A stretch of DNA of 64,000 bases from Eukaryota sp. TZLM1-RC (GCA_040285825.1 JAUPSS010000004.1:3851658-3915657), one strand, 5' to 3'. Positions 6,412 through 29,600 are shown, numbered from the stretch's first letter. A program made the numbers and translations. The notes: a model not told the origin generated them from the sequence alone.

Positions 6412-6420
6412 TTTAAAAAA

Positions 6421-6500
6421 ATTCAGTTCGTGTTCACAAATATCATGAATATACAATTCATCTCTTTCTAAGTGTTTGTCTTTACATTTTTTTCAAAATT
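6421..6500 (-). pseudogene. Fanzor1 #2 segment between the non-LTR and MULE insertions
   Basis: KRDELYIHDICEHELNF resembles the Fanzor1 'ELYID' region that precedes RuvC-I. Confidence 0.6.
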
Positions 6501-6502
6501 TT

Positions 6503-9500
6503 AATTTATTGAATTTGCACACTTGATTAAATTAAATCATAACTAATGGGACGACTATCATTAAACCAAGATTTCCTCTACAAAATCTTGATTTGCTTGC
6601 TGTCTAGCTAAAGCTTCTCTAATTCGATTGAAATACCGCGGTAATCTATTAATAATGGCAAATTGAATCCGTGAACGCCATAAAAAAATATCAAATCTTT
6701 TCATTGTTTTTTCTTTCACCATTTTTTGGAAGTCATCCAAAAAAGTTTCTGCTTCAACTGATAATCTTCCATTTATCGAAAATGGGAAAGCAATAAAAAC
6801 CAGCTGTGTATTTCTATCGATATTTGCATCTTCAATTTCTTTATCATATTTTCTATGTTTTTCTTTTGCTTTAAAATCCAGAGCAGCCACAGGATTAAGT
6901 TTTCTTCTGTGAACCAAAGTATCGTTTGCAACATTACATGAGACAAAGTCAACAATAGCTTCAGAATTATCAATCCAATCACAGTATACATCACCTCTAT
7001 CATCAGAACCAAAATTATTCAGAGAAAGTGTTTCTTTCAGCAGGGGCTCTTTGATACACGATATCTTTGCAGTTTGTGCCATATTGAAAACAGTGTCTCT
7101 AACAGCATCATGTAATGAAGAACGATAAGTTATCAATTTAGAGCAATTTAGAGCATGGCGCAAAGTGAGTTGAGGTGAATTCGAACAAATACATTTTTCT
7201 TTTGATAATAATTGGTTAATGGGGATGTTCAAATATAATCTCATTTTTGTTACAAATGCTTCATTAGTAGCACACAATCCAAATCTTCGTGGTACAATGG
7301 TTACAAAAAGTGAAGAATCTGACACCTTGTTTTCACAAACACCCTTTTCCAATAACAATGAGTGAAGATCTTGATTTAAAACAGCCGAGCTGCAAATATT
7401 ATTATAAAGATCTTTTTCATACATTCCAGTCAATCTTTTCTGTAATGTTCGAAGAGTATACTTCAAATTTAAAACATTTTTTTCTGGAATATTGCCATTG
7501 AATGATTGGGGAAAACATCGACCCCATTTTTCTACATCAATTCTTGAAATTTCTTCATTTAATGCAAAAACAGTGGAACTTTTGCGTTGTCATCAATAAA
7601 TCTTCCCAATCTGCAAATCTTTCGGAGAACTCAAAGATTGCATTTCTGCATCCACCAACAAAAGCACACGAGGTAAGAATAGAAGCCTTCGTCCACCCTA
7701 AACCACCATATTGTGGACTAAGGTAAGCATGATCTGGAATTTGAAACATTTTACATCCCAGTAATTGAGACAGAACTTTTGCACGTAACTCATTAAACTT
7801 TTTGAGCCAAAGGTCTAGTGACGAGAGGATTTGTAGATCGAAATATATGATTAAAATTGGAACTAAAACACAGTCTTATAATGGTAAATTTGATGTGTTT
7901 TTTTATATCTAAATTCATCATTCGGTCAATTTTGTCAGAAATTGAGTTCAACTTTTCAAACAATTTTTTGGTAATTTCATCATTATTTCCTAAAAACGAA
8001 CCCAAATGACGAATAGCATCAATTGAATATAATTTGGCTTGAATTTCAATATCATCAATTATTGTGGAAACTGGAGAATTCGATAACAAAACACATTTAA
8101 GTAAATTAAGTCGGAGACCAATTTTGGTAAATAATTCTTTAAAACATACAGTTGCTTTTTTCACAATATTTAATTCACCAATAAGCACAACATCATCCAT
8201 ATATGCAATCATTTTTAGTGAAGGAAACATCTCTTGAATTTGCAGTAGAATAGGATGAATGGCCAAACAAAACAAAAGAGGTCCTAACGGATCTCCTTGC
8301 TTTACGCCACTTGATGAAATCAAAATGTTGTTACCAAAATGTAAATTAGAATATTTGCAATATGTTGATTGAAAATATGGTATTAATTCTGGCATATATT
8401 GCAATAGAGCACCATGGATACTGCGACGACTTAGCGAATTGAAAGCATTACTAAAATCCAATGACATGCAAACATTGGATTCATTTTGACGAAATAAGAC
8501 ATCAGTAGCAAAAATCACCCACTTCATCACTTGATGAAATCAAAATGTTGTTACCAAAATGTAAATTAGAATATTTGCAATATGTTGATTGAAAATATGG
8601 TATTAATTCTGGCATATATTGCAATAGAGCACCATGGATACTGCGACGACTTAGCGAATTGAAAGCATTACTAAAATCCAATGACATGCAAACATTGGAT
8701 TCATTTTGACGAAATAAGACATCAGTAGCAAAAATCGCTGAAGAGACTCCATCTGTAGTATTTATACCATATTGAAAGGGTAATAAAATCTTTTTAGCTT
8801 TTTCATTGAACCTGCTTAAGCAACACGCAGAAAAAATATTATGTAAGCTCTCAGAGACTGCAATAGGGCGAACATCCATTTTTGAATTTTTGACAAGTGC
8901 AGTCAAACGAGAACTTCTTAATTCTTCTGGGTATTTGCGTTGACCAGATAATATTTGGTTGAAAAATTTGGTCAATAAACCAAGGCAATCTTCTGAAGAA
9001 ATAATCGCGGCTTTTACATGATCAATAGTAATACCAGAAAGTCCGGCAGACTTACCACGAGGTCTCTTTTTGATAACCGAAAAAACTTCTGATGGCATCA
9101 ATGGATAATTTTCCCAGTATGTGCCGTAAAAATTTTGATCCATAATAGGGTCTTCATAAGGATGAAGTATTTTCAGTTTATCTACTGTATTTTCATTGTT
9201 CGGTGCTTTGACTCCGGGACTTAAAGCTGACAAAGCCTTGGACCATTTGTTGTCAAAGCATTTGTCTTCAAAAATTTTACTTAATTTCTCGGATGACTGA
9301 TTTCTCGGTGCTATATTAGTTAAATCTTCGGAAATATTAACGAAATTTTGTTCAAAAGGAGGACAAAAAGAACCAAAAAAATTCCCAAATAATATTGATA
9401 GCATACTTTCCTTTACATAATTGATCCAAAAATCTTTGAAAAACGAAAGCAAATTCATTGCATTTGGTCGGATGAATTTCTTGAGGTATTCTTATAGGAG

Positions 9501-9782
9501 GATGGTAGTTATCAACTATGCGGCATTTCAAGCAGCGATCAGAAGTTTTTCCTTTTGCATTTTTTCTAAAAGAAATACCACAAGTGTTGCAAGTTTTGTG
9601 CTTCAATCGATTGCTAACTGGTTTTGCAACAACTTGTGGAGCATTATTTATGGGTTCTACCTTAGACTCTTTCCTTCTAATAAATTTTCTTTTACATTTT
9701 GTTTCAGAATTTGCCGCATCATTTTTTCCAACATTGGGGCATGTTCGAGCATTATGTCCCTGTTGTCGACACTTTGAGCATC
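6503..9782 (-). mobile_element. Near-full-length RLE-type non-LTR retrotransposon (CRE/SLACS-like), family A, frameshifted
   Basis: N-terminal CCHC knuckle CSKCRQQGHNARTCP (about 9737-9781) and CxxC pairs. RT motifs RPIAV, LDFSNAFN, GVKQGDPLGP and YMDD. C-terminal CxC..HxxxC zinc finger with RGD/DF..KHRKY RLE, then a conserved 3' UTR. Confidence 0.95.
8308..8736. repeat. 209-bp tandem duplication inside the RT with an 11-nt filler
   Basis: 8308-8516 matches 8528-8736, with spacer acccacttcat. The duplicated peptide IFATDVLF...ILISSS is present in both ORFs. Confidence 0.95.
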
Positions 9783-11100
9783 AAATCTTTTCAAATCAAT
9801 CCTTTTGTGTTGAACTGAAACTTCAAACCCATCTGTCAGAATACTGCCATCAAAAAAGTAACCATTAGTTTTTTTGGTCATGGCACTATGCTGTATATTG
9901 AATACCCTTTGCCATGTTTTAAGATTCTTTTGGTCAACGTTAATCGTTTGATCATTACTTTCTTGAGTTTCATCAAATTTTGTGACGGGAAGCAATTGAT
10001 TCACCAGTCAGTTTTGGTGATTGATTATTAATAATTTAAATACCTCTGGTTTCAAGCCGCATATACGCTGAAGACAGTGATATTCTAATGGGAAAAAACG
10101 TTGTAAATGAATAAAGGATTAGGGTTTTTCCTTCAGCATTTTCGATTACTTCTTCAGAATTACGATTGACGTCCGTCATTAGCATGAAAGACTTTGTAAG
10201 ATATTGTTCCCAGTGTACCTGTTTATCAAAAAATATATTAAATACATGAGGCTTTCCTGTCTTTAACTTGGATTTTGGGATGGTCAAATTGAAACTCATT
10301 TGCTGGAGCATATTATTTACTGTTTTGCATTCTGTTGTAGTGTGTAATGAGTTTCATTTTTCAACTTGTGTGTTTGACTCCTCTTGTCATCCTCAGGTTT
10401 TTGAACAACATCATCCTCAACAACTTTTCGAATTTTAGGTGGATTACCTATAACAATCAGAAATTTTCAACCATGACACTTATACTGTTAAGGCCAACAG
10501 TTTGAATTCTATTTAGTTCATGTTCAAACATTCTAAAGATAGTTTTCACCATTTCGTGCTTGGCTGGTGAATTAATATTCATTTTGACTTCCCAAGCCAC
10601 ATTGATCAAGCGGCAAAAATGTTCAGAAAATGTTGTGAGAATATTAACCATATAGGACGTATGAATATTGGTGACACAATGATCCAAAATTCGAGTCACT
10701 CCCACAACACCGACATGAGTGTTGATCGAGAACAACTGAGGGTTATAATGGTTTATATAGATATTGGCCATTATAAATCTTGAAGTGTGAGCATCTTGGC
10801 GTGGTGGTTTACCCGTTACTCCCTTGTATAGGAATTTGTGAAAAACATTCACCTTTAGCCTTTCTTTGTCATCTTGTTTCAAATGACAATATTTTTTGAC
10901 CACCCAAAAAGTAAAGTGGCTTCAATAAGTTCTTTGGAAAACAAGACTGATTCCTCATGATGGAAAAAGCAATGCAAGTAATTCATAAATCCTTCATACA
11001 ATTTTGTCAATATTAACAACCATCACTTGAATCACTGTTTGCACATTTTGGTTAGGAATTAAATTTTTGATACCATATTTGAGGATTTACATTGAAATCA
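9783..11100 (-). pseudogene. Fanzor1 #2, N-terminal REC/WED region
   Basis: Motifs LKYGIKNLI, ILDHCVTNIHTSYMVNI..F, FFPIRISLSSAYMRLET and WQRVFNI..YFFDGSILTDGFEVSV occur in Fanzor1 order. Confidence 0.85.
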
Positions 11101-12060
11101 ACTTTAACAATTTTTGGTTTTGTTGTTCAAGAAATAGTTAGGAGTTTCGAAAACCAAAAGAGTATTCTGAAGACAAAGAATGGAGTAATTCTTCGTCTCT
11201 ATGGGACCAGGCATTTCCAATGACCTCCAAGAATTTGAATTTCCAGGCTGGACTGAGTTTTTTCTTAGCCCTATTCTCGCTCAATAAGTTCATGTTTACC
11301 TTGTTTTTTCAGAAAACATGAAGCAACATCAGATAAACTATTTCCAGCACCACATAGTGAAGTTGATGCTAAATTGAAGAGTATCAATAATTTTGAAATT
11401 ATATACATCTTCAATGAAAAGTTCAAAATATCAGTTAGTGGGCTAGATAAATATTCTCTTTTGAATAATTCCTTGCCATTAATGAAAGAGCGACTTTTCA
11501 AAGAGGACAAATCAAACTGTTTGATGTTATGTCCAGCCAAATAATCTGGTTGACAATTGTTCAGGGAATTATCAAAATTATGTATGATTGAAAGTTCATT
11601 GGGAAATAAATGAACAAAAAGTATCTGAGCAATGATTAGATACGGAAGAAAACACATTATAATCAGTGGAAGCCACAAATATATGTTTCTGTTTATTAAT
11701 TAATTGCGAAACCTTTGAGTCAAATTCCGCAATGACCAAAGAGATAAGTATGATAGCGTCTCTTCTAAGAGAAACGTCAGGTGGCTTTGAGAAAATCTGT
11801 GTCTTTTGATTTTCAATTTCCTTAATATGGCCTAAATTTGTTAATTTTTGTTCTAAAGAATCAATTTTAGCATCAAGTTTTTATCTTCCAGAATTATTAA
11901 TTAAATTGACAATGATTTGACTGTCTCTTTTAACAAATCTTGTTTTTGCGTTGTTTTTTTGATATTCAAAAATGAAAAATCTTAAATATTCGAATTTGTG
12001 TTTGTACTAGATATCAAGATTTGTCTCAATGTCAATCCACCATAAATTGACATTTTTGGG
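11100..12060 (-). pseudogene. PolB-type DEDDy 3'-5' exonuclease domain directly upstream of Fanzor1 #2
   Basis: ExoI WIDIET (12022-12033), DAIILIS, FPNELSIIHNF, ExoII PDYLAGHNIKQFDL, SLSDVASCFL..K and degenerate ExoIII CLQNTLLVF (about 11150-11175). Confidence 0.85.
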
Positions 12061-12372
12061 ATGAAAACTTTCTAATGATTCAAAATCAATAAGTTTTTCT
12101 GTAGCTTCATTCATATTTAGATCTACATGTGGAAAAGACTCATTAATAAAACTTGTGGGTCAGTCTCAGATGGCTCTGAGTCACACGAGATTTATTGGTC
12201 TTTGAAGCAACTGCAGACGCTCTAAAGTTGTTTTACGTTTGATAGTATAAGAAGTGGTTGATATACGTTTAAGTGACATAAACGTTTATCAATAGTGATC
12301 ATATTGAAATCATATGGAAAACTAATAAATCGATTAGTATAAAATGCGAACTTTGCGAGATTTTTTACAAAG

Positions 12373-12423: not shown

Positions 12424-13342
12424 GTTTGCCTGGTTTTGTGCCAGTTTATCGGTACATCTCCACCATTTACATGTGCTTGTTCCACTGCCAACACATTCAG
12501 TGAAGCATTTCGGGTGAAATTGTATTGTTTTCACTTTGTCCAAACAATTCCGTGAATTATTTCAAAAGTATATGTCTATTAGCACACATTACGAAGACAT
12601 TGCTGCAGTGAGATTTGATGGTGAAAAAGTGGGTTCTAAAAATATTTCCTCCTCGATTGTGTTTGCAATAATTGGATCGATGAATAATAATTCCATAATA
12701 AATTGTGGTCAGTAACACAAGATCTTTAAATTTCTAAAACTTTGTGATTGTCAAATTTTGGTAAATGTTTGTGGATAGAGTTTTACAGTTTTGACATGTG
12801 GAGCATTCATCAAATGCAAGCATATATTCTCAAGCAAAAAACTGAAAAATTGTTGTTACTAAAGCTTGTTCAACACTGTGAACAAGCATATGAAGGACTT
12901 TGATTCTCATGACTGATTATGAGAAAAACAGCTTTTTAGAAACAAACAATACAATGCATGTATTGGATTTTCAAAAGAACAGAATTGAATGTATGGATCA
13001 TCAACCTGTTACTTCAGCAAAGTTTTCTGTACGCTTTGAAAAGGCTGATACGTTCATGAGGCAAAATTCATAGCTGGTGAAATGCCATTGTTGCTCCAAT
13101 GGTTACAGGAACGATTTTTCGTTTTCTGTGGGTCACTTCTTTCATACATCATCACTGGTGGTTTGGGGTATTTGTCAAGTATATGCAGTAAATGGTACGC
13201 TTTACCATTTTTCTTTGTTTATTATTTCAAATACCATCATTTTATTGCAATATTAGCATAATGTATTGAATTAGTGCTTCTGAGCTACCATCAGGAATTA
13301 GTGCTTTGGTATTAATTTCTAATTGCTTTTTTGAAGATCTTT

Positions 13343-14859: not shown

Positions 14860-15305
14860 CATTGATTTATTCCAACAAAAAACTAAGCAGCAGACTCAAA
14901 ATTCGAAATCTTCATACCCCAACTCAGCCAAAAAGAATTTACTGGAAGTTTTTGTTTCGTAAAATCGACCAGGAGATATCAAAGCAGAAAATAACAAGGG
15001 GATAATGTTATTAAAAATAAGAAAAAAAAACAATTCTGTTCTGCCAAAACATTTTGTCAAAAACTCTTCCTGTACGCTGTTTCACAAATTCAATAAAATC
15101 ATCCAAGAAAGATACATCAATGGAAAGTGATGAAATGTTTACAATTAAACAGATGTTTTGGAGAAATTTTTGATCCATTTTTACAAATGAACGATGTTTT
15201 AAAAGAATACCTCAAATTTTGTAGCGTTCTAGGTGGTATCTCGTGTACGTTATCAGGAAAACATTTACTCCAAATGTTAGGGGGCAAACAATTGAGAGCA
15301 TTTTC
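14860..15305 (-). mobile_element. Internally deleted 3' fragment of non-LTR family B
   Basis: IWSKCFPDNVHEIP..HLFNC and FWQNRIVF..LGYEDFEF are homologous to 33608-34501. Confidence 0.8.
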
Positions 15306-15353
15306 ATGGCGCATGCCAACTATGACTAGATGTTACTAGTCAGTAAAAATAAA

Positions 15354-17610
15354 CTAAGTTCTAAGATAAACAGGCCTACCTTCTTCACCGGATAACCAGT
15401 GATCAAATACATTCAACATATTCAAACAAGCCATCTTGTTCCTATTCCAATACTTTGCCTTGACTGCTTCTCTACTTTCTGACTTTTTACATCGTGCTTT
15501 TGCATCATTAATACACTGAGAACTTCTACATTCCAAAAGCCCATGAGGAAATTTGAACGGTGTTTTTTCAGCACTTTTAGGAATTGGATTCCTTGTTTTG
15601 ATAGTTGTTTCAAACACTTTTTCAAAGCAAGAAGGACACTTTGAAGAAGTATGGCTTTCATCAATTAGAACAGTTTGAAAACCTCGTCTAAGAAAACAAC
15701 TTATCCATCTATTGGAAGGAGTTGGGGGACTATGTTTGAGATTACTGATTGGTTTACGACCCAAGTCCCCAATACACAATACCATTTTGTCTTTACCACC
15801 GAATGTTGTCAATAACTTGTTCACAATTCTTTCTTCAGTGTTTTTCCTATGGATAAAACTTTGGATATTATGTATCCTCCATAAGGGTAAACTATAAAAT
15901 TGTTTCACTGCATTGTAGTGTTTACACTTGGCCAACATAAACTCTCTGAATTTGTGGTAATCAACAGTTTTTGAATCATGATCACGTAACCACGAATTCC
16001 ATTCCTCAATGGTCATTGTCTGGTCTTCACTAATACGATTATTTTGTCTAACACAAAATTGTAACACTTGTTTGTGTTTTCTATTCACCATATGTTAGCC
16101 TCATCCATTCATATTTTTTCAGTGGATTTGAATTGGATTCTTCCGACTGTGCTCCAAACTGAATTAAATCTCTCTTTCCAAGATCACCAAAAACCACATT
16201 TTTATCACTATAATCTTCAGGATCAAGGTGATCAAAATAAGAGACTGAAACCTTGGCAATATTTGAATCAGGTTTAAAGGTTAATCCTGCGAAATCTTCT
16301 CTCACAAACTGAAAACAAATACTTATACCATTGGTTACTGCGTAATTATTGAATTTGAAACCATTTTTTTGAAAGATTTGTTATTAGTGTTGAACCATCT
16401 GTTCCAATAAGAATTCTGTTGATTGTGAGTTAGACTACCAATATCAGATATATACATATAATTTTGGACTTGTTTAAATCGAGGTTTACCATCTAAATTA
16501 CCCATAGCATTTTTCCCAATACCCCACAATGTTCGCATGTCTATTGGAAAGTATCCAGGTTTACTACCCATATTAAGTGGAATGACATTAAACAATTTTG
16601 CTTCAATTCCTTCTAAATATTGAATTATTTGAAATGATGGTTTCAGAAAATGTAAAGGATACTTTTCAAGGGTGTATTGCAGTATTTTAACTTGCACATT
16701 TTCTGTTCCATTGCCCTCATTAATTTGGATAATATTTGGGAAAATTATAGACAACCAGTGCTCCAATAATAATGTAACACCTTCTTCCATCAAATAATTT
16801 GTGATTTCAAACACAACATCGGTTGTAGAATTATCAAAATATTTAATAACTTCTTGTAAAAAATATACATTAGATGGGTGATCAGAATTTCCAAAATTTT
16901 GCAAGTAATTAATTAATTCAATTCGCTTCCCACCAGTCATAAAATCCTTCACAATTTTCTAACGAAATCTAAAGAAACTGAGAAATCTTTGGCGTTGCAT
17001 ATAATTCAAATGTTGCAAACTATCTGGAAGAACTTCTGTCCAATTTTCCTTCATTAGATCTTACAAATCTTTTTTTCCCATTATATGATTAATGAACCTC
17101 TTGATATATAAATGATAATTTCTTTTGATATTCAGTTCAAAAGCAGGCCACATTTCATATTGACTCATGTATTCAAATGATCTATTTACATGGTTATAAT
17201 CTAGTCTAGGCATATGGCAAATTGATGAAGTGTCGGTGTATTCAGTGAGACAATGGCGATACCCAGGGAATTCAGAGTTGTTATCATAAGTTCCTAACCC
17301 AAAAATAAAGTTGTTCAAATCATCACTTAACGTTGGTATTGGTTTATCGAATGCTAATTTAAACCGATGCACCTTTGAAGATAATTTTTTCAAACATATC
17401 ATTGTGTGATAGAATAATTTGTAGTCAAAATTTGTTAAATCTTCGCTCTTCATGAATTTGACTAAAAGATACTGTTTGACACAAAATGAAGTTTGTTGTC
17501 TTACAGCAGTCATTATCTCAGATGCTATAAGTAACTCTTCTAGTAATTCTCTATACCTTGCTGTAGATGAAACAGAGGTCTTTACTGTAGACCATGACTG
17601 ATTTATTATT
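15354..17610 (-). pseudogene. Fanzor1 #1 (complete REC/WED plus RuvC and zinc finger), disrupted by stops and 1-nt frameshifts
   Basis: STVKTS; FELNIKRNY..IKRFIN; YTLEKYPLHFL..KLFNVIPL..GYFPID; TNG (equivalent to TDG); RuvC-I FGDLGKRDL (D at 16183-16185); IGD; RuvC-II LIDESHTSSKCPSC; HGLLEC..C; RuvC-III WNRN (D to N); terminal RPVYL. Confidence 0.93.
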
Positions 17611-18420
17611 TTATCCCTTTGGAATAGAATAAACAATTTGAAAACTAGAATTGCATCCTGAAGACAATAAGATCCTAATGTTCTCAATGGTTTATTTGAA
17701 TAGAGGCTATCAACAGGTAATAAATTTTTAAACTCATCATGAAGTTTAAGTTTTGTTTCAGCAAGTACATGGTATGCTAAATTGTTCAATGAAGCTCCAT
17801 ATCTAATTTTGATAAATTTTCTGGCAAACAAAAAAGTGTCCAAAATAGTGAAATTTTCATAAAACTGAATTACTTCTCTCCAACGTCGATGAAGATATAA
17901 TTCATTTAGACCAATTCATTGGGACAAAATTGGAAAAGTTATTCCAAAATGTGATAATCGCACAGCCAACACAGGTAAATCAAAATTAAAAATATTATGG
18001 CCTAAGAAACCAACAATTTTTTTTATCATAAGTGAATTCTGCAAATGACTTCAATAGATGTTGTTCATGATCAAATTTATTCAATGAAACATCAAAAACT
18101 GGTTTGTTATCATTGGTCCATGATAACACTCGTCTCGTTCCCTCTAAATTAGCAACATAATTTATACTCGAGGAATGGAAAATAGTATCCCCATTATGGT
18201 CAATTTCAAACAAAATCATAGAAATCATTAAAATTTCGTGCCGTTCTAAAAAACCTGTTGTTCTAACAATTGCTCATCATCAGTCATTTGGCGACGTCGC
18301 TCTGACTATGATTGCTTTTGTTGAGCTCGCAAATTGTCTAAAGTTTTATTAATATCTTTTTTCTTGGTTATTTCAACACCAATTTCCTTGGTTTCAATAT
18401 CAATTGAACAAATAAGAGGG
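17610..18420 (-). pseudogene. PolB-type DEDDy 3'-5' exonuclease domain fused to Fanzor1 #1
   Basis: ExoI SIDIET (18390-18401), HEILMIS, FDHEQHLLKSF, ExoII GHNIFNFDLP (about 17975-18003), ILDTF, SLNNLA..L and ExoIII YCLQD (17655-17669). ExoIII lies in the same ORF as the Fanzor N-terminus. Confidence 0.9.
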
Positions 18421-18956
18421 CGATCAGAGGTACTAACTTTTTGATTAAGGACAGGATCATCAATAAAAGGTTTCTTTTTAACCTTTTTCTTCTTTCCCCG
18501 AATCACATCAATTTTTTTAAATTCATTAACACTTGAAACAGAAGATTTAGGTGCAACAAGATTTTGAAAATCTCTGGGTTTCTGAGGCAGTTCAGTACTA
18601 CCTCTACTTTGGACAAACCTACGTCGACTCCTCTTTGATGAATGTTCGACCGGAATCAGAAATCTTTGACTGTTTCTTAATGATTTTGAATAACTCAATG
18701 ATTTTCTAATTTTGTTATATTTGGTCCTACGTTGTATTGGGGTCAAGGATGAATCTTTTCCAATTTGGGATAGTGTTGAAGGTTCTTGTTGCAGGCTGTC
18801 TTGCTGATTGGAAGAAATCACGGCAGAAGTGATTGGTCTCATATTTTTTACAGAAGAAACAACCTTTGTGGGAACAACAGACGATGATGACCGTCTGACA
18901 GTTTTTGAAGGAGGGGTTGATTCCACTGATGACTTTCTCATTTTGGGCTGACAATA

Positions 18957-18986
18957 TGGACCAGGGTTCGCCTCTACATCACCATG
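18957..18986 (-). other. 2A ribosomal-skipping (StopGo) peptide #2
   Basis: QLLTEHGDVEANPGP matches the D(V/I)ExNPG/P consensus. Confidence 0.9.
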
Positions 18987-19650
18987 TTCTGTGAGCAACT
19001 GTTGTTTCAATGCTGCGCGGAACTGATATACATTGACTGAAATATTGGCTGTTTCCGTCAACATCTCGTTTAAAGAAACAAAGTTGTGATGATTTTCTAT
19101 AAAGTACTGTACATATTTCAAACAAAAAATTCCGCAATCATTCACACTTTGAACTCTAGGCACAGGAAAAATTTTAACACCATCAAGGCAACTTAAAATC
19201 ACTGCAAATTTGTGCAATACAGCTGCAATATTGTGAGATACTTCTTGACCTTGAGTAACCATGGAATCTATGGCACCACAATATAAATTATAGTCTTCGT
19301 TGTTCGGTTTTTTCAAAAAAACCCATGACATCAATAACTAAAACAATCCAATGATTTCCCATTCCTCCAGATTCTATGTCCATTGATGAGACAGTCTTAC
19401 CAAAGACATCATTGATTGGAATAATGACAAAGCGACAATTGTGATTGTTACGGATGGGTGTTATAATGTAATTACGCATGGTCCGAACCATTGACTCATG
19501 GTCATCAAGGAGAGCACTCTGAACCACATTCACATTCAAAATTGAAACATGATTGGATTGGATCATCCACTTGGCTGAAAAATAATTTATTACCTCATCT
19601 TCAACAAATTCCATTGGTTCTAATGATTTAATGGAGGAAAGATCGATCGA
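18987..19650 (-). pseudogene. Ulp1/SENP (peptidase C48, SENP8-like) cysteine protease domain with one frameshift
   Basis: EFVEDEVINYF, IIPIND..GG.GNHWIVLVI, AIDS and VQSVNDCGIFCL give His, Asp, Gln and Cys. The frameshift lies in the A7/T6 runs at 19308-19321. Confidence 0.88.
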
Positions 19651-19680
19651 GGGACCTGGATTTGCTTCTACGTCACCATG
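19651..19680 (-). other. 2A ribosomal-skipping (StopGo) peptide #1
   Basis: WVPDLTTHGDVEANPGP matches the 2A consensus. Confidence 0.9.
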
Positions 19681-19739
19681 CGTTGTGAGGTCAGGAACCC
19701 AGTCTGAAGATAATTCGCAAATAGTGGAAGAACCAATAG

Positions 19740-20805
19740 TGGAAGCATCAGTAACTATCATTGGATCATTATTGCTAGAAACAACAGTTTCTAAATGAAT
19801 AGTGAAATTAGTAGCAACAAAAAATTGAGATTGGCAATCAACAACAACTACTTCATCAGAATAATAATTGAAAAATACAAAGCAGCATAAATAATAAAGA
19901 ATGGATAACAAATCGACTATACAGATACATATAGTCAAATCTTTCTTCACCGTAATCAACAACAAACAGTCAAAAACTGAATGACTAATGATTAGGCAGT
20001 CGTTTATGTATCTATAAACAAAGACTCTGCCTTCAAGATTCTTAAATTCAACATTAGTTAGTTTGAGGTCAGAATTAGTTAATTCAAAGTGACCATCGTT
20101 AGCAGTAGAATGACGAACAAGAACAGTTTCTAAATCAATAATAGAATCAGTAGTAACAATAGATTGAGATTGACAACCAACAGCATCTACATCATCAAAA
20201 TCAACAATAGACTTAACAAGGGTAATAAGAGGTTCATCATTAGCACATCCACTAATGACTTTTCCATCAGAATCAACTGGACCTAAAGTTTTGACATTGG
20301 TGAAATCCAAGGTTGAGTCATCAGCATTGATGAATGAACCTGAATAAGAAGAAAAATTGATGAGAACCAAATTAGTTAAAGTAGTTTCTGCACTAGAATT
20401 GAAATCAATTAATCTGAAAACAGATGAATCAAGTACTTTAGAATCAACCAAAGTTACTTTACTGAAGGAAGTATTCAAAAGAGCTTCAGATGGAGTATCA
20501 ATATTTAAAAGTTGTACACACAAACCTTCAACTTTAGAACCACTCTTTATATCAAAAGCTTTAACTTCAAGATTGTTTAATTGGACATCAGTTGCAGTGA
20601 AGTCACAATTGGTTAATTCAACATGTCTAGAAGCTTGTGAATGCACTACATCAACATTAATAAAGGTAACATCTGCATTGTTAATACCAACAAGAGTTTG
20701 GGATAAATGACCAGTAAGTGAGGAGTAATAATAATAATAAGTGAGGGTAGTGGGGTTGGGGTTGGGGGTAGTGGGGGTGGGGGTGCTATTTGTGTGCTCA
20801 ATCAT
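19740..20805 (-). CDS. Beta-helix-like (pectin-lyase-fold-like) Thr/Ser/Asn/Val-rich segment in frame with 2A #1
   Basis: Repeated beta-strand patterns and an internal repeat (GCQSQSIVTTDSIIDLETV / DCQSQFFVATNFTIHLETV). The ORF is continuous into the 2A and the protease. Confidence 0.45.
20745..20783 (+). other. G-quadruplex-forming G-tract cluster
   Basis: gggtagtggggttggggttgggggtagtgggggtggggg contains five tracts of at least 4 G. It is preceded by (taa)5. Confidence 0.7.
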
Positions 20806-20976
20806 GGATTGTAAATCTCCAAAATAGGCGTATTCAGTGGAATTGTGACGCTTGGGAAGGAGTCATCCATGGACATCAGTGGTATGGTAGATAATGTAAG
20901 GAACACTTCGGGCAAAAACTGCCGTGAGAAGTAGTCAAGACAAGAAGTTTCATGGAGAAAGAAAAACAGAAGCGGA

Positions 20977-23820
20977 ATGGTGTCATTAGTTGCTACAAAA
21001 TTCAACAAATTCACCACTATCCCTCATCAACTCACATCCATGACAGTAACTGTGAACTTCCAAGACATTCTCTGTAAAGCTGCCAAAAACCCCTTTGAAC
21101 CTCTCAACATCAGTCAATATGTCTCACCTTCGATCATGTTTTCGGATTCATCTCATAAAACCCCGTTTCTACCTTACGCTATCAAGGACATTCCTAAAAA
21201 CCATCTTCTCCTGATAGAGCGTGGTTTTTCAATAGTTTGGCCCGCCAAAAAGACCCCAGAAACTACTTGCTGTTCCCTCTGCTCTCTTCGCTCGGCCTTT
21301 GAATCAGAGATCTCCCTTCTCAATCATGTTCAGCGCAAAGCCTTATTCTCACGACTTTCAGCTCATGCCCTCCCCACTAACCCCTCTTCAGAAGATCTCC
21401 ATCAATTCGTCATTGAACACTGCTTTCCTCTCACTCATTCTCAGTACCATGTCCATGCTCGTTCCCGTCACTTGTTTAGGCACTCTCCTGACGAAGGGAG
21501 GGGGATCTTTATGCTTGCTTCAAATATCCCAGTCGCTTGTGTTCCTAATACCGCTTGTTTTACCATTGCTGATTGCTTATTTATCGTCACTACAACCAAA
21601 ATTAAATCTGGTTCGTTATTGTTACTTCCTGTTGATAGCAGGCCTGGTCTGGATTGCCTATCTCTTGGTACTAGTAAGTGTGGAAAGATGTCGAGTGGAG
21701 ATCAGGAAAAGCTTTATGATGTTTGTGCCAAGTGCAACTATGAAATTTCGTTATCAACAAAATCTTTATTCGAAGTTTGCTCACTCAGAGCTGGATTGTA
21801 TCAATCAATCACTGACCCAAAAATTTCATTTGATCAGACATATTCAAATTTTCAATCAGTTGCCAGTCAATTACCTCAGGGATTACCTTATTTGCAAATT
21901 GATGCCGCTCTGTGTAGATGCCTTCGATATATTGATTTAAACTTTCCAAAAGCCGTACGATCTCTTCAATTTGCTTACCAACTATCCAAAACTAACTTGG
22001 GTTTCTACAGAAGAAGAGACTTGTTCTTGAAATTGATAAGAATGGTTGCGATCGAGTATAGTAAAAAAGATTTACCTGAAATTAGTGATAAATGGACCTC
22101 TAGGCTTCTTAAATTGACAATCTTTCCCTTTAACCTCTCAGCTTTTTTTGATCTCTATCTCACCAATTATGTTGATCTTATTGAGTTACCTTCAATTTTG
22201 TCCATATTGGAAGATGAAGATTGCGATTCTTATGAAGACCCATTTGAAGACTCTGTCGCTATGAATAAACTAGCGGAATTAAACCAAAATTTAAAAAATT
22301 TAAAAACTCTGAAGGGTATTAAAAATATGACCCCTGTTCCTGAGGAAACCAAAGAAACTATCAACTGTGGATCTAATCAATCAGAATTGATTACCAATCA
22401 AATTTCTGATCCAGATAGTAAGAAATCAATCTTTTCTGATTTATGCAATAGATTTAAAATTCTTTTATTTCAACGTAGATTTGTGTCGTTGCTATCAGTT
22501 TTGGGCAGAATACCATTAGATCAATCAAATCCCGTGTTAAACTTTTTTTCTGCTATTTGTTATCAAGCTTGTGGTCAGTTTGAGACAAGTATTGAAATTT
22601 TCAACGCCTTGTCGAAAATTTCAAATGAATCTCCAATGAGCTCTACTATTAACCAAGTGATTAAAGAAGCAATGTATGGAAATTTTGATTTAGCTTCAAT
22701 ATTTGAAGAGTATTCTACTGATCCTTACTCTGGTTGCCTCCATTCAGAATATAGATCAAAATTGATCAAAGTCAACCAAAGTCCTCCAAATGGTCTGGGA
22801 ATTTCTGCTGTCGAAGACATCAAAGTTGGAGAGTTTCTATTGGTGGAAAGAGCTCTAATCACCCAGTTTCCAAACTCTGAAGATGACGTTTCCAATCAAA
22901 ATATTGATCCTTTGAGCTCTATTGCACGAAAAATTCAACATTTAGAGGATGAAATACCTGAAAATTTAAAAATTTCTCTGTTGAGTTCTCCATGTCGAGT
23001 TGGCTGGTCAAACATAGTCAAGAAGCTCAAAAAGGAAGCTCACAAAACACCATCATTAAATACCATCAAGAAGTCATTAGAATCGAACTTGTTTCCTCTC
23101 TCCCATCGGCAATTTTGTTTTCACCCCCCTCCAAAAGAAACTAGTCTTGGTGGGTTTGGGGTGTTTTTGACCGCATCACGTTTCTCGCACACGTGTGCTC
23201 CCAACGCTGTTTACTTTACTGTAGGCGACTTGATTTTCATTCGAGTAGTTAAACCAATCTCAAAGGGTGAGTCTGTTTCTATTAGAAGAATTGTTTCGGC
23301 TCCTAATGGGGAATTTTTCCCTTGCAGTTGCTGTGTTTGCAAAGCCGAAATTGAGTCAAACGATAACAAAGGTAACAGCTTTACATTATTGAAAAAAGTG
23401 ACAAAGTTACTTTTTTCCTCCCCTTTTTCTTCTTCATTCGATGCCATATTTGATAGGTTTAGGTCAACCTTAGACTCAATGCCTTCAAGATACCCCCCAC
23501 TATCAGCTGAAGCTTTTACCAGAGCTGCTCAGTTTAAGGTTTCGCAATTTGAGTTTGAGGCCGCCAGAGATTACTTGGATATTGCCTTTCAAGATTTGTT
23601 ACTACCAGAATCCAGTGGAGTTGATGTTCTTCCTTTTATAGAAGTTTGTGTCTCCCTTATAGATTACTATTTGGATTGTGGTAATATTCAAGAAATTTCT
23701 GAAATGGAACGAAGAATTAAAAAATTAGTAATTTTGATTGGAATTGATGGCAATGATGATGCCCTCTGCGGAAAATTAGTTAAACAAATGAGAATTAAGA
23801 AGCAAAGTGACGTTTGGTAG
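20977..23820 (+). CDS. SET-domain (SMYD-like) protein with a second, degenerate N-terminal SET and TPR-like helices
   Basis: GLGISAVEDIKVGEFLLVE, GVFLTASRFSHTCAPNA..KPISKGESV and post-SET FPCSCCVC. The N-terminal copy reads GIFMLAS..ACVPNT..IKSGSLL. Confidence 0.8.
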   Translation: MVSLVATKFNKFTTIPHQLTSMTVTVNFQDILCKAAKNPFEPLNISQYVSPSIMFSDSSHKTPFLPYAIKDIPKNHLLLIERGFSIVWPAKKTPETTCCSLCSLRSAFESEISLLNHVQRKALFSRLSAHALPTNPSSEDLHQFVIEHCFPLTHSQYHVHARSRHLFRHSPDEGRGIFMLASNIPVACVPNTACFTIADCLFIVTTTKIKSGSLLLLPVDSRPGLDCLSLGTSKCGKMSSGDQEKLYDVCAKCNYEISLSTKSLFEVCSLRAGLYQSITDPKISFDQTYSNFQSVASQLPQGLPYLQIDAALCRCLRYIDLNFPKAVRSLQFAYQLSKTNLGFYRRRDLFLKLIRMVAIEYSKKDLPEISDKWTSRLLKLTIFPFNLSAFFDLYLTNYVDLIELPSILSILEDEDCDSYEDPFEDSVAMNKLAELNQNLKNLKTLKGIKNMTPVPEETKETINCGSNQSELITNQISDPDSKKSIFSDLCNRFKILLFQRRFVSLLSVLGRIPLDQSNPVLNFFSAICYQACGQFETSIEIFNALSKISNESPMSSTINQVIKEAMYGNFDLASIFEEYSTDPYSGCLHSEYRSKLIKVNQSPPNGLGISAVEDIKVGEFLLVERALITQFPNSEDDVSNQNIDPLSSIARKIQHLEDEIPENLKISLLSSPCRVGWSNIVKKLKKEAHKTPSLNTIKKSLESNLFPLSHRQFCFHPPPKETSLGGFGVFLTASRFSHTCAPNAVYFTVGDLIFIRVVKPISKGESVSIRRIVSAPNGEFFPCSCCVCKAEIESNDNKGNSFTLLKKVTKLLFSSPFSSSFDAIFDRFRSTLDSMPSRYPPLSAEAFTRAAQFKVSQFEFEAARDYLDIAFQDLLLPESSGVDVLPFIEVCVSLIDYYLDCGNIQEISEMERRIKKLVILIGIDGNDDALCGKLVKQMRIKKQSDVW

Positions 23821-24647
23821 TGTTCAATAAATATTTAATAATTGTTCTTTTTTCATCTTTTTTGTCTTTTCTACTGGTTATTTTCTTTTTTTTGCATTCT
23901 TTTTTAGTTTAAGTTTGGGTTTTCCACCCTAACTATCCGGGTTTTACGAATATCTTGACAGCTTTAAGTAAGCAACATGAGCAAACATTGTTGATGTGGA
24001 GTTACAACAAGTGTACCAAGCAAGGAATGGGTTCTTACTCTTTAAAGCAAAACATAGTTCTTTTCTTACCCAGGAAAACTATCATAAACTGTAGCAAGTT
24101 GAGTCTCACTCATTTCTTCAACTTTCTCAGGGTTCATGGCTGTAATGTAGATGTAGTATATTTGATAACTTTAAATTTAGTCACCAGGATTGAGAGTTGC
24201 AAATGGTGAAATTAGTTTGGTGTATTAATGGTTTGGGTCAATGGAAGCAATAACATTTTCTCTTTTTAATAAATTGAGTTCATTTTCACTTAAATATAAT
24301 TTACAATACTGTTTTTCTTTCTTTTTCTGTTTGCTTGTCTTGACCCTTTTTCATATAATCCCTTTGTGTTGAATCAATACCCCCATAAGGCTTAACCATA
24401 GTCCCAATGATTGAATCAAACAAATGTACAATTGATATCTATGATCCCGAACCAACATTCATGTTCAGGATCTTTTTCCAAGTTTTAAGCTTTTTTAACG
24501 ACCTCATCATCGCTTTCCATTTAACCCGTGACCAATTGAAGAAATTTGACAAATTAGACTTTTCATTCTTTCATTTTTAGTTACAATTTTGCATATTTTT
24601 TTGGCCCGTGGCTATTATAATTGGTTTTAAATTAGTCTAGTTTGAGT

Positions 24648-24868
24648 TTGAACTTCCACACTAAACAAAATAAAATCATAACTAATGGGACGAAATTCAA
24701 TGAACCAAGTTTTCCCCTACAAAATCTTGATCTGCTTGCTGTCTAGCTAAAGCTCCTCTAATTGGATTGAAAAACCGAGGTAATCTCTTAATAATGGTAA
24801 ATTGAATTTGAGAGCGCCATAACCAGATATCAAATCTTTTTATTGTTTTTCCTTGAACCATTTTTTTA
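24648..24868 (-). mobile_element. Short 3' fragment of non-LTR family A
   Basis: Homologous to the 3' ORF end and UTR of 6503-6730. Confidence 0.85.
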
Positions 24869-25049
24869 GGTTACAATACAATGTGTTATTAATGGTTTAA
24901 TCATTGATTTTTCTTGTTGTATTGACGAACTTCTGTTTCTCTTCATAATGCTTGAGTCAATAAAGTTCTAGTGCACAACAATAGTTTAACTTGAAGTTCA
25001 TCAATTTTCTTTACATTTTGAAGAATTTGACAAGTTTTTGTTATAGAAA

Positions 25050-25108
25050 CAATAATTGAGTTTTAGACATTGGAAATTTGATAAATGTGCCAAGAAGCCA
25101 ACATAAAT
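25050..25108. repeat. 59-bp dispersed repeat, identical to 57530-57588
   Basis: caataattgagttttagacattggaaatttgataaatgtgccaagaagccaacataaat occurs at both sites. Confidence 0.9.
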
Positions 25109-25832
25109 AAAATTTATTGAATTTGCACACTTGATTAAATTAAATCATAACTAATGGGACGACTATCATTAAACCAAGATTTCCTCTACAAAATCTTGAT
25201 TTGCTTGCTGTCTAGCTAAAGCTTCTCTAATTCAATTGAAAAACCGCGGTAATCTATTAATAATGGCAAATTGAATCCGTGAACGCCATAAAAAAATATC
25301 AAATCTTTTCATTGTTTTTTCTTTCACCATTTTTTGGAAGTCATCCAAAAAAGTTTCTGCTTCAACTGATAATCTTCCATTTATCGAAAATGGGAAAGCA
25401 ATAAAAACCAGCTGTGTATTTCTATCGACATTTGCATCTTCAATTTCTTTATCATATTTTCTATGTTTTTCTTTTGCTTTAAAATCCAGAGCAGCCACAG
25501 GATTAAGTTTTCTTCTGTGAACCAAAGTATCGTTTGCAACATTACATGAGACAAAGTCAACAATAGCTTCAGAATTTTCAATCCAATCACAGTATACATC
25601 ACCTCTATCATCAGAACCAAAATTATTCAGAGAAAGTGTTTCCTTCAGCAGGGGCTCTTTGATACACGATATCCTTGCAGTTTGTGCCATATTGAAAACA
25701 GTGTCTCTAACAGCATCATGTAATGAAGAACGATAAGTTATCAATTTAGAGCAATTTAGAGCATGGCGCAAAGTGAGTTGAGGTGAATTCGAACAAATAC
25801 ATTTTTCTTTTGATAATAATTGGTTAATGGGG
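25107..25832 (-). mobile_element. 5'-truncated non-LTR family A copy (young), with possible TSD acataa
   Basis: Nearly identical to 6503-7225. acataa occurs at 25101-25106 and 25833-25838. Confidence 0.92.
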
Positions 25833-26616: not shown

Positions 26617-29600
26617 TCAACTGACAATGATCTCTTCTTCCTCACTTTCATCTTCTTGTGTATTGGGTCTTTCCTTCAAGGCTACTCCTGCTGCCGAAAA
26701 TCCAGTATTGACAGCTGTCTGAGTATTAAAGGAAGAACCATCAGTTCCAGATTGCCTTGCCATTTCCCAAGCCAAGCGTAATTTTCTTATTGATAAAAAG
26801 GATCTGATTGGTCCAATGGCAACAATAATGAGCATTATAAAAGCATTAATTAGATGGACAGCAACTAAAAAAGGTTCAATAAGAGACGAAAAATTAGGCA
26901 TTTTCATTAAGGTGAACCCAGAGATTGCTGTAACAGTAATAGAGAACCTGCTGAAAACATCCATAAACACCTCATAACCATCAGAAAGAGGTTTTGTTAC
27001 CCAACTGAGCACAAAAACTAAGCCAACAATGATGGAAGAAATCAAAAACGACAATTCTCCCAAGTTGATGACCATAAACACAGACAAAAACAATAAGGAC
27101 CCCTTTTCAATCATGTGAATAACCTTCCAATACCGCAGTGGTCTTCTATAGGCAGCAAAAAGATAGCTTTGGGCAGTGGAAAATTCTTGACATGCTGATG
27201 AATATTTTTTTCTTATTTCCTTTTTCAAACGTTTAATTTCATCTTGAAAACCTGGTGGTGTATCTCTTTTTAATTGGTCAATTCTGTCAAGCAATTCTTT
27301 TCTTTTTGCTTTCAAATTATAATTTCTATCAATAAGGGCAACACCTTTTCTTATTAAAAAGAAAAAGAAAATGGGAATAGAAAACATAAACAATGCTCCC
27401 ATTACAGCATTAATCAACTGAAAAGTCGTAAAGTCTTGGAAAGTCTCCCCACATTTTTGAGCGGGTAACGTGGCAATCACCAGTTCACCATCGATTTCCT
27501 TACATATAAAAGTTGATAATATAGTTCTTGAAACCGGCATAAAAAGAATTGTCAGAGAAAAAAGACAAATTCTTCTTTTTGTTTTGATAAAATTAAACCA
27601 ATAAGCTGAATTCTTTTGGTTACTTCTGAAAGATTTTGCAAGTTTAAAATACAAAAGAAACACCACACTCCATAAAACAAACGTAGCAACCAAAAAGCCC
27701 ATAGAGTCCCCACTGGGCCAATTACCTGAGATAATCAATGAGATTGACCCGAAATCGACAAGCAACACCGATGATAAGATGAACAACAGAATACCAACAA
27801 AGTATATATTCAGAGTTAGCCTTTTGTGTCGTTTCCAGTAGAGAACATAACGTAACTTCCATTTGTTGTAATTAAAATCATAAAAATATAAAACGGTAAA
27901 TATCAATGGTAGCATAATGAAAGTGCCATACTTGATATAATCAAAGTAATCAAAATCAAGACGTAGCCAATCAAAACTGATTGAGAAAGGAATAGTAAGA
28001 TACTCATACCAAATAATGAATTGAGGCCACTCAATATTAATGTTAAATGCAAACAGCAAGCCCAAAATCTGGAAGAAACCAGTAATAATTTCCAGTTTAG
28101 TCAAAAAAGAACCCAAAGTCATGAAAAAGGGAGTTTTGAGGGCATTTGTGTAGGCTACAGATATTAAACCTGAAAACCTTTCAAAATTGACGTCAACATT
28201 GACTTCTTCAGAATTTTGATCTTCATGATTATCATCATCGATTGAATTTGATTGATCATCATCAGACTGATTTCCTTCATTTTCTGATGGATTTTGACCT
28301 CCATTGCCTCGATGACTATTATTTCCGTCTTGGTGATGGTCATTCCCATTGTTTCCTTCATTTTCTGATTGATTTTGACCTCCATTGCCTCGATGACTAT
28401 TATTTCCGTCTTGGTGATGGTCATTCCCATTGTTTCCTTCATTTTCTGATTGATTTTGACCTCCATTGCCTCGATGACTATTATTTCCGTCTTGGTGATG
28501 GTCATTCCCATTGTTTCCTTCATTTTCTGATTGATTTTGACCTCCATTGCCTCGATGACTATTATTTCCGTCTTGGTGATGGTCATTCCCATTGTTTCCT
28601 TGATTTTCTGATGGATTTTGACTCATTGGTTGAGCCGATGTACTTGACTTTACTGGCATTGCTGTATTAACCTGTTTGCTGACAACACGTGATTGACCAC
28701 TTTCCATTTTGGTAGAGCCAATAGCTCCAGGTCCTGCAGCGGGCTTCTTTTTTCCTTTTTCCTCACGAAGTTCCAAAGTATCTGAAGAGATTTGATCTGT
28801 TTGACTAACCTTACAAACAACAGGATTCAATAGCTCTTCACTTGGACGTTGCAAGAAATCTAAACCAGAGGAGCGAACCATTTTTTCGCAAATTGAATGA
28901 GCATTGCTTCGTTCTTCCAAAGTAATTTCTGTAGAATTTAAAATTTTCAGAGAAGGGATAAGAAAAATGGCCATGAATCTAATATTTGAAATTTTCTTGA
29001 AAGCAGGGACATCAATTGACAAATTCTCAACTGGAAGGTAAGCCAAGCACCTTAAAATTGCTACAAAATGCTGTTCAGAAAAACTACTTCCAAAAGGTTT
29101 CAAATCAATATTATAAAGTCTATTAGGTGAGAAGTTACCGAATTCCAAAAGAAAATTAAACGCATTCAACTGATAAGGATTAAGACCAAAAACATTGGGA
29201 ATGTTCTCTAAACTATGCAAACCTCTCAGTTTGGAACACACCAGTTCAAAATAAGTTTCAATTTCATCAGTTGATTTATCAACAGTACTTTTGAGAAGAT
29301 ACAAATACTTGAGGTTGGCGCAATAAGATAAAGCGTCAATTAATAGTGGCAAATCTTTAAATTTATTATCGCAAAGATTTAAATGCACCAAGGAAGGAAA
29401 ACTGGAAATTTCATTTAAATTTTGTGAAAACTCTGTCAAATCGTTATGGGAGAGATCAATAGAGATCAAATGTGAATATTTGGACAATGATTTGATTGAA
29501 GACAGACCACAATGGTTTAATTTGATGGTATTATTTCCGGAAAGTACACCTTGTCTATGTGCTACTAGGTCAATTTTGAAAGAATCAGCGGCTTTGTTTG

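What the first reader, a model, noticed from the sequence alone, without database searches (positions are those of the whole stretch)
15354..20805. Polyprotein element: 2A / Ulp1-SENP protease / 2A / DEDDy exonuclease fused to a Fanzor1 RNA-guided nuclease
Seen in sequence: one minus-strand coding run, broken by a few stops and 1-nt shifts that mostly fall in homopolymer runs. In order it holds a beta-helix-like segment, 2A #1, a C48 protease (H, D, Q, C present), 2A #2, a basic Ser-rich linker with an NLS-like RGKKKKVKKKP, a PolB-type exonuclease with DIET, GHN..FD and YCLQD intact, and a full Fanzor1. Established: Fanzor1 proteins are eukaryotic TnpB relatives guided by an omegaRNA, and 2A peptides cause co-translational skipping. 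Inference: the element expressed a free de-SUMO/de-NEDD8-type protease and an Exo-Fanzor of about 1200 aa from one mRNA. That would combine RNA-guided cutting, end resection or guide trimming, and host ubiquitin-like-modifier antagonism. I do not know of this architecture being described. No transposase or polymerase palm domain is visible.
Basis: partly seen in the sequence, partly recalled or inferred. Interest (0 to 1): 0.95.

Follow-up and report, generated by a model that had tools for sequence, protein, structure and literature searches.

The report
Dead exonuclease-Fanzor 2A polyprotein transposon
This is a broken, apparently full-length copy of a mobile element found only in Skoliomonas flagellates, whose single gene uses two ribosome-skipping 2A sites to yield a secreted-type protein, a SENP8-like protease and an RNA-guided Fanzor nuclease naturally fused to a DNA-polymerase proofreading exonuclease, a combination I found in no paper.

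Summary
Observation confirmed and extended. The window (Skoliomonas litria TZLM1-RC) holds a 5.67-kb element (20976-15307, minus strand). Its gene runs: signal peptide plus beta-helix-like leader / 2A / C48 protease / 2A / NLS linker-PolB exonuclease-Fanzor1. It ends in a 47-nt two-hairpin tail that looks like an omegaRNA.

This is not chance nesting. Eight other loci are 95-98% identical and one encodes an unbroken exonuclease-Fanzor. Two other Skoliomonas species keep the fusion at 30-53% identity, with 2A and protease, while the front cargo varies (doubled protease, DEAH helicase). The RuvC triad is D-E-N, as in the active GtFz1. The hairpins keep their shape in four families despite sequence change.

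This copy is a true pseudogene: four stops and 2-, 14- and 174-nt deletions. There is no transposase, TIR or TSD; right ends are fixed and left ends often truncated.

My best guess for the exonuclease is trimming 3' DNA ends at the guided cut, not classical resection. Nothing is shown biochemically. The scan reported this architecture before on other DNA of this genome.

The parts
20954..20978 (-). Left end and 23-nt 5' leader of the element. The boundary is at 20976; a shared AT at 20978-20977 may be target or element.
   Evidence: Same boundary in independent copy L007; no TIR/ATIR, no TSD
20900..20953 (-). True start codon and signal-peptide-like N-terminus, broken here by a 2-nt deletion at 20936
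   Evidence: Intact in L002 (P0212) and L007; 13-residue hydropathy 3.1
19711..20899 (-). Leader cargo: Pro/Thr/Asn repeat, beta-helix-like segment and hydrophobic patch; in-frame 174-nt deletion at 20029
   Evidence: ESM Atlas structure hits to right-handed beta-helix/Pmp-like proteins, TM 0.62-0.66, on a low-confidence model; no Pfam hit; high-depth related contigs with loose ends
19651..19710 (-). 2A/StopGo peptide #1 (DLTTHG-DVEANPG|P)
   Evidence: upstream hexapeptide resembles the DLTxDG class of PMC12846837
19017..19653 (-). C48 (Ulp1/SENP8-like) cysteine protease; +1 shift at 19321
   Evidence: Pfam PF02902 E 0.0099 on the window piece; orthologue P0173 hits SENP8 best, E 2.7e-7; GEM-RC1 copy carries PF02902; H/D/Q/C aligned
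18957..19016 (-). 2A/StopGo peptide #2 (LLTEHG-DVEANPG|P)
   Evidence: a 2A also precedes the linker-exonuclease in GEM-RC1 P0185
18429..18959 (-). Basic Ser-rich low-complexity linker with NLS-like RGKKKKVKKKP (18500-18468)
   Evidence: poorly conserved between species
17610..18428 (-). PolB-type DEDDy 3'-5' exonuclease; stops at 18308 and 17918, shifts at 18253 and 18024
   Evidence: PF03104 E 7.5e-7 in P0009 and to 6e-14 in orthologues; AlphaFold model matches Pol delta/epsilon exonuclease domains; catalytic motifs kept across families
15354..17609 (-). Fanzor1 (WED-REC-RuvC-TNB) with D-E-N triad; stops at 17063 and 16961, shift at 16370, 14-nt deletion at 16085
   Evidence: phmmer to SpuFz1 E 3.8e-15; Foldseek to PpFz1, SpuFz1 and GtFz1, E 1e-27 to 6e-19
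15307..15353 (-). Right end and predicted omegaRNA scaffold: U-rich run, stem 1 (15342-15323), 4-nt linker, terminal stem 2 (15318-15307)
   Evidence: Sharp common end in all nine copies; same two-stem fold in four families from three species
15292..15306 (-). Right flank = predicted 15-nt guide (host DNA, not element)
   Evidence: Differs between independent insertions; guide role inferred from SpuFz1 (PMC10432273)

Best explanation
The feature is a decayed copy of a Skoliomonas-specific Fanzor1 DNA element that encodes no transposase. Shown: one ORF holds leader-2A-protease-2A-exonuclease-Fanzor1, the right end is a conserved two-stem structure, and the family made recent copies. Inferred: translation begins with a signal peptide; 2A #1 releases that leader, so the downstream products stay out of the secretory route; 2A #2 separates a free SENP8-like protease from a nuclear 1,198-aa exonuclease-Fanzor. 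The Fanzor loads an omegaRNA cut from the 3' end of the same transcript (two stems plus about 15 nt of right flank) and cuts sites made of TAM plus flank, that is, empty alleles. Fanzor1 cuts 14-21 nt away from the TAM, so the TAM-side end carries a 3' tail that the element-bearing donor does not have at that place. The tethered proofreading-type exonuclease most likely chews back that 3' end (as Pol delta's exonuclease does in yeast break repair) or spoils re-ligation, and so pushes repair towards copying the element in. New insertions probably need a transposase supplied in trans that starts at the right end (HUH/rolling-circle type, as proposed for the CRe-1 elements of Chlamydomonas). The protease is accessory, as in Ginger1 and Mutator elements. 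Confidence by step: architecture 0.95; active RNA-guided nuclease in intact copies 0.8; functional 2A 0.85; exonuclease acting on 3' DNA ends at the cut 0.55; trans HUH mobility 0.4.
For: Unbroken exonuclease-Fanzor ORFs in sister copies and two other species. The exonuclease's last helix joins the first Fanzor strand with no indel in all families seen. Catalytic residues of both nucleases are kept at 30-53% overall identity. Skoliomonas Fanzors of this type form one branch, SH-aLRT 100 in a quick tree. D-E-N triad is active in GtFz1 (PMC11423790). Two stems plus linker match the SpuFz1 scaffold; cut positions 16-21 nt from the TAM (PMC10432273). Shuffled tails give this fold in only 0.4-3% of cases. 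Restorative homing model (PMC13565253). Pol delta exonuclease trims invading 3' ends (PMC9477423). Fixed right ends, 5' truncations and a pyrimidine after the end in 11 of 12 independent sites resemble CRe-1/Helitron2 (PMC3627910).
Against: No RNA data were found, so the transcript, omegaRNA and 2A products are unobserved. No RepHel, ATIR or TSD. No empty site was found, so the TAM is unknown. The whole-protein model leaves the exonuclease at low confidence, so its position relative to the RuvC site is unknown. dN/dS between young copies rests on too few changes. Several 5' truncations are due to later nested insertions (L002, L005).
Confidence: 0.55

Rival explanations
1. Same element, but the exonuclease acts on RNA: it trims the 3' end of the omegaRNA guide to mature length and plays no part at the DNA break.
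For: The omegaRNA needs a defined 3' end in the flank. The DEDD superfamily includes RNases (own knowledge). The fusion is tight.
Against: All sequence and structure neighbours are PolB proofreading DNases. Other Fanzor1 proteins mature their guides without such a domain: the exonuclease profile hits only Skoliomonas proteins among 211.
Confidence: 0.12
2. Transposase-free self-mobility: the exonuclease-Fanzor itself opens and trims new sites, and host repair copies the element in from its right end, giving precise right ends and ragged left ends.
For: None of 12 loci from three species encodes a known transposase, yet copies are 95-98% identical. No TIR or TSD. One family adds a DEAH helicase to the fusion.
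Against: A guide taken from the flank directs cuts only to the same or a repeated site. No route to join the right end to unrelated DNA is known. The genome was not searched whole for a helper; earlier scan notes list HUH Rep-like genes (unchecked).
Confidence: 0.13
3. The transcript is mobilised in trans by the abundant non-LTR retrotransposon reverse transcriptase, which would also give fixed 3' ends and 5' truncations.
For: RT elements are dense around most copies. The truncation pattern is typical of target-primed reverse transcription.
Against: No poly(A) tail and no TSD. A 2026 review finds no evidence for retrotransposons encoding Fanzor and no benefit from homing (PMC13565253).
Confidence: 0.12
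4. The exonuclease and protease are passengers kept for another reason, such as host or antiviral function, or remnants of an ancestral virus-like element that had a whole PolB; they do not cooperate with the Fanzor.
For: 2A peptides, PolB and C48 proteases all occur in viruses. The closest outside hits of the exonuclease are phage and bacterial PolB genes.
Against: No palm domain or capsid gene in any locus. Cargo upstream of the last 2A is exchanged, but the exonuclease stays fused to Fanzor in every family where that region survives.
Confidence: 0.07
5. Chance nesting or assembly artefact.
For: The genome is repeat-rich and assembled from long reads; four shifts lie in homopolymers.
Against: Same order in independent loci and three species; unbroken ORFs exist.
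Confidence: 0.01

Closest known systems
Fanzor1 nucleases SpuFz1, PpFz1, GtFz1 (PMC10432273, PMC11423790)
   Same: Fold (Foldseek E to 1e-27, TM by target to 0.79), rearranged RuvC-II Glu next to the C4 zinc finger, two-stem right-end RNA, and the D-E-N triad of GtFz1
   Different: N-terminal PolB exonuclease fusion, 2A polyprotein, protease and secreted-type leader; very short post-stop scaffold (47 nt; true 5' end unknown)
CRe-1/2/3 Fanzor1 elements of Chlamydomonas (non-autonomous Helitron2; PMC3627910)
   Same: Fanzor1 without its own transposase, intact 3' ends, frequent 5' truncation, 3' hairpin, T/C after the insertion point
   Different: No ATIRs, no TSDs, no matching autonomous Helitron found; polyprotein with 2A
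MCi-2 of Mucor circinelloides (PMC3627910)
   Same: Conserved Fanzor-bearing 3' part with exchangeable 5' modules and no TIRs
   Different: MCi-2 has 11-12 bp TSDs and a partial Crypton transposase; no exonuclease fusion reported
Ginger1 and Mutator transposons with Ulp1 domains (PMC2836005)
   Same: C48 protease as an accessory domain of a transposon
   Different: There it is fused to a DDE transposase; here it is flanked by 2A sites and paired with an RNA-guided nuclease
Engineered exonuclease fusions (TREX2-Cas9, T5-Cas12f; abstracts)
   Same: Exonuclease tethered to an RNA-guided nuclease
   Different: Natural, uses a PolB proofreading domain, and conserved across a genus

Membership tests
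Fanzor1 | RuvC-I Asp, RuvC-II Glu six residues before a C4 zinc finger | tested here: met
   GDLG (16185), DESHTSSKC (15659), CxxC...CxxxxC; aligned to SpuFz1
Fanzor1 | Terminal RD motif (third catalytic residue) | tested here: inconclusive
   RN instead of RD in all Skoliomonas members seen; the same change is natural and active in GtFz1
Fanzor1 | Fanzor1 fold rather than Fanzor2/TnpB/Cas12 | tested here: met
   Top seven Foldseek hits are Fanzor1 structures, E <= 6e-19; next hit 1e-5
Fanzor1 | Structured omegaRNA scaffold at the right end followed by variable flank | tested here: met
   Predicted two-stem fold kept in four families; flanks differ. Prediction only; no Rfam match
Fanzor1 | omegaRNA expression and TAM-dependent guided cleavage | not testable with these tools
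   No RNA run listed
PolB-type DEDDy exonuclease | ExoI DxE, ExoII NxxxFD, ExoIII YxxxD and the fold | tested here: met
Family-B DNA polymerase / Polinton | Polymerase palm, integrase, capsid genes | tested here: not met
   None in the element or in 12 loci
Peptidase C48 (Ulp1/SENP) | His-Asp-Cys triad with oxyanion Gln | tested here: met
   Pfam scores for the window piece and P0173 are below the gathering cut-off
Peptidase C48 (Ulp1/SENP) | Substrate (NEDD8, SUMO or ubiquitin) | not testable with these tools
   Best solved relative is SENP8/NEDP1
2A/StopGo | D(V/I)ExNPGP octamer with a supportive upstream hexapeptide | tested here: met
   Two in the window; exact DLTxDG in GEM-RC1 and RCL copies
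2A/StopGo | Measured skipping | not testable with these tools
   Needs a reporter assay
Helitron2/HLE2 | RepHel transposase | tested here: not met
   Absent from all loci; the helicase in P0169 is DEAH/HrpA-like, not Pif1
Helitron2/HLE2 | Asymmetric terminal inverted repeats and 5' hairpin | tested here: not met
   Longest match 6 nt (8 nt in L009); weak or no 5' fold
Helitron2/HLE2 | 3' hairpin, insertion before T/C, one-ended 5' truncation | tested here: met
DDE cut-and-paste transposon | TIRs and TSDs | tested here: not met
Non-LTR retrotransposon or SINE-like passenger | RT gene, or poly(A)/repeat tail with TSD | tested here: not met

The most novel reading that the evidence does not exclude
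A new kind of eukaryotic mobile element in which the exonuclease-Fanzor (with a helicase in one family) is itself the mobility machine: it cuts and trims target DNA under RNA guidance, host repair copies the element in from its right end with no transposase, and 2A sites let captured host genes be swapped as cargo.
Probability: 0.13. Interest if true: 0.92.

Novelty: new variant of a known kind. Interest (0 to 1): 0.72.

Why it matters
In the Fanzor surveys and the 2026 review I searched, the word 'exonuclease' does not occur and no natural accessory fusion is described. Here a whole genus has kept a proofreading exonuclease welded to Fanzor1, the design that genome engineers build on purpose to raise editing efficiency. 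It makes an open question testable: how ends cut far from the TAM are processed so that repair restores the element. Unbroken ORFs exist (KAL0226007.1, KAL0210696.1) and the scaffold is very short, so wild-type versus exonuclease-dead comparisons are simple. It also extends 2A recoding to a DNA element in a metamonad, where it seems to serve as a joint for swapping cargo.

Tried and rejected
Pfam on the broken window pieces gave only weak hits, so intact sister proteins were used. TSD and TIR searches were negative, and no empty site was found among the held loci. Rfam gave nothing. Exonuclease searches of viral and metagenome contigs returned PolB-like matches only: 37 loci, none with a Fanzor nearby; one was read and is a full PolB. 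The homologue search for the leader found only two sister copies and is blind to longer proteins. I first read the ATG flush with the left end (20977) as start-codon docking on the SET gene and rejected this: the conserved start is Met22 at 21040. The ATG at the right end opens only about 30 codons. 'All breaks are long-read errors' was rejected: there are non-homopolymer lesions, and a short-read contig crosses the 174-nt deletion with no difference. Contigs could not settle the four homopolymer shifts for this copy, because they merge paralogues. dN/dS among young copies was uninformative. The careful tree did not finish, so only the quick tree is cited. My extraction of the tails of the other Fanzor remnants was mis-indexed and is not used.
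Full report
Source. Exact look-up placed window proteins on a 6.9-Mb contig and in a cluster of proteins from Eukaryota sp. TZLM1-RC (assembly GCA_040285825.1). This isolate is Skoliomonas litria, a free-living anaerobic metamonad (PMC11603281). The assemblies are Nanopore polished with Illumina (PMC11316075).

The observation. Two perfect 2A octamers (19674, 18980) flank a segment with the His, Asp, Gln and Cys of C48 proteases; chance expectation for one octamer in the window is 3e-5. A basic linker with an NLS-like run follows, then the three exonuclease motifs and a Fanzor.

State of this copy. Against sister copies L001 and L002 the window copy is 98% identical. It has 1-nt shifts in homopolymers at 19321, 18253, 18024 and 16370, deletions of 2 nt (20936), 174 nt (20029, in frame) and 14 nt (16085), and four in-frame stops. 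A short-read contig crosses the 174-nt deletion without a difference. The copy is therefore dead whatever the homopolymer shifts prove to be.

Domain identity, tested on unbroken relatives. The Fanzor part of P0009 hits only SpuFz1 and PpFz1 in the PDB by sequence. Its AlphaFold model is confident over the Fanzor and matches the three solved Fanzor1 proteins far ahead of any Cas12. The triad is D-E-N; Asn at the third position is natural and active in GtFz1, and D606N raises SpuFz1 activity (PMC11423790). The exonuclease scores PF03104 at E 7.5e-7 to 6e-14. A model built from Skoliomonas sequences alone matches Pol delta, epsilon, alpha and viral PolB proofreading domains. The protease of orthologue P0173 hits SENP8 first. 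The leader begins with a signal-peptide-like stretch at 20953 and resembles beta-helix proteins only on a weak model. Related contigs at several-fold higher depth that run off into other sequence suggest capture from a host surface-protein family; this is inference.

It is one element. Eight other loci in the genome are 95-98% identical (three of them share one insertion site). All stop at the same base 47 nt after the stop codon. L007 shares the left boundary at 20976 and is an internal deletion derivative; most others lack 5' parts. P0009 is an unbroken 2A-linker-exonuclease-Fanzor and P0012 an unbroken protease end-2A-exonuclease-REC.

Other species. In GEM-RC1, locus L012 reads signal-like leader, 2A, two C48 domains, then exonuclease-Fanzor, and P0185 has a 2A before the linker. 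In TZLM3-RCL, P0173 reads hydrophobic leader-2A-C48-(internal deletion)-exonuclease-Fanzor, and P0169 carries a DEAH helicase in front of the fusion. Identity to P0009 is 30-53%, yet the exonuclease motifs and the indel-free junction into Fanzor are kept. These Fanzors form one branch against 60 others (quick tree, SH-aLRT 100), and the window's family is sister to the GEM-RC1 family, as the hosts are. An exonuclease profile hits only Skoliomonas proteins among the 211 held, which include the 150 best Fanzor relatives. The fusion therefore looks ancestral to the genus and absent from the relatives sampled; the upstream cargo is exchangeable.

Right end. The tail folds as a U-rich run, a 6-7 bp stem, a 4-5 nt linker and a terminal stem ending in CA. 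Four families from three species keep this shape with different sequences; stem 1 swaps A-T for G-C pairs between this family and GEM-RC1. Shuffles give the shape in 0.4-3% of trials, although single-sequence folding z-scores are modest (-1.2 to -3.8). SpuFz1's scaffold is likewise two stems and a linker, followed by a 15-nt guide (PMC10432273). A pyrimidine follows the end at 11 of 12 independent sites. An AT precedes the four apparent left ends seen in two families, too few to call a TAM. There is no TSD, TIR or ATIR.

Mechanism. Established: 2A causes co-translational separation, and the upstream DLTxDG class is functional (PMC12846837); Fanzor1 cuts 14-21 nt from the TAM; OMEGA nucleases are thought to act by restorative homing (PMC13565253). 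Inferred: three products, a secreted or membrane leader, a free protease and a nuclear 1,198-aa exonuclease-Fanzor. After a cut in an empty allele, the TAM-side end carries 14-21 nt that lie beyond the insertion point and must be removed before the element can be copied. In yeast, Pol delta's 3'-5' exonuclease trims invading 3' ends (PMC9477423). A tethered proofreading domain fits that job, or simply prevents re-ligation. Ulp1 proteases are known accessories of Ginger1 and Mutator elements (PMC2836005). How the element reaches new sites is unresolved. The pattern resembles the one-ended CRe-1 elements (PMC3627910), but the defining Helitron2 features were tested and not met, so I do not file it as a Helitron.

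Novelty. Paper searches for Fanzor with exonuclease and protease, or with 2A, returned nothing relevant. The Fanzor papers read do not contain the word exonuclease, and the two 2A surveys read do not mention Fanzor or Skoliomonas. The library lacks most subscription papers and Repbase, so absence is provisional. Earlier AI notes of this scan describe the same architecture at other loci of this genome; they agree with, and are not evidence for, what was tested here.

Verdict. A real and genus-wide new variant of Fanzor1 elements; this copy is a pseudogene that keeps both ends. Interest 0.72.

Noticed in passing
window 9660-12100, minus strand: A second, older and divergent exonuclease-Fanzor relic (DIET and GHN..FD motifs; PF03104 E 7.9e-7; REC and WED pieces). 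Its RuvC half is missing, replaced by a retrotransposon that begins at about 9780.
   Followed up: partly
window 38177-38839, 54850-55382 (minus) and about 12748 (plus): Further Fanzor remnants. The 38177 one has canonical RD and stops 181 nt before the start of a TPR gene (37996), so it may belong to the start-codon-docking family noted by other reports.
   Followed up: partly
window 20977-23820, plus strand: Tandem SET-domain host gene, head-to-head with the element. Its conserved start (21040) is only 63 nt from the element's left end, so the element sits in its promoter region.
   Followed up: yes
L009 7855-16084 (TZLM3-RCL, P0169): Family member with an HrpA-like DEAH helicase fused in frame to exonuclease-Fanzor (2,027 aa), behind a repeat-rich, Cys-rich ORF; L011 is its internal deletion derivative.
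   Followed up: partly
L012 7330-9080 (GEM-RC1): Two C48 protease domains in tandem, separated by a short coiled-coil repeat, after the first 2A.
   Followed up: partly
L001 7017-7560 and 14228-15211: Two more Fanzor relics flank the intact copy, one upstream in the same direction and one tail-to-tail with an exonuclease, suggesting that these elements cluster.
   Followed up: no
L004 11264-11282 versus 13283-13301: The right flank (predicted guide) of this copy matches 19 nt inside a BTB gene 2 kb downstream, right after an ATG triplet: a possible self-target or gene-fragment duplication.
   Followed up: no
L001 9147-9912; related sequence at window 3465-7400, 24633-25832, 51917-53383, 60801-61307: An abundant repeat, 97-99% identical between many loci, has inserted into the protease of L001 with an 8-nt overlap suggestive of a TSD; its ORF resembles the C-terminal nuclease part of a non-LTR retrotransposon.
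   Followed up: no
window 8308-8516 and 8528-8736: Perfect 209-nt tandem duplication inside the reverse transcriptase region of a young retrotransposon; recent, or an assembly artefact.
   Followed up: no
window 26617-32739, minus strand: 2,040-aa LRR-rich multi-pass membrane protein with an 81-nt tandem repeat at 28190-28675.
   Followed up: no
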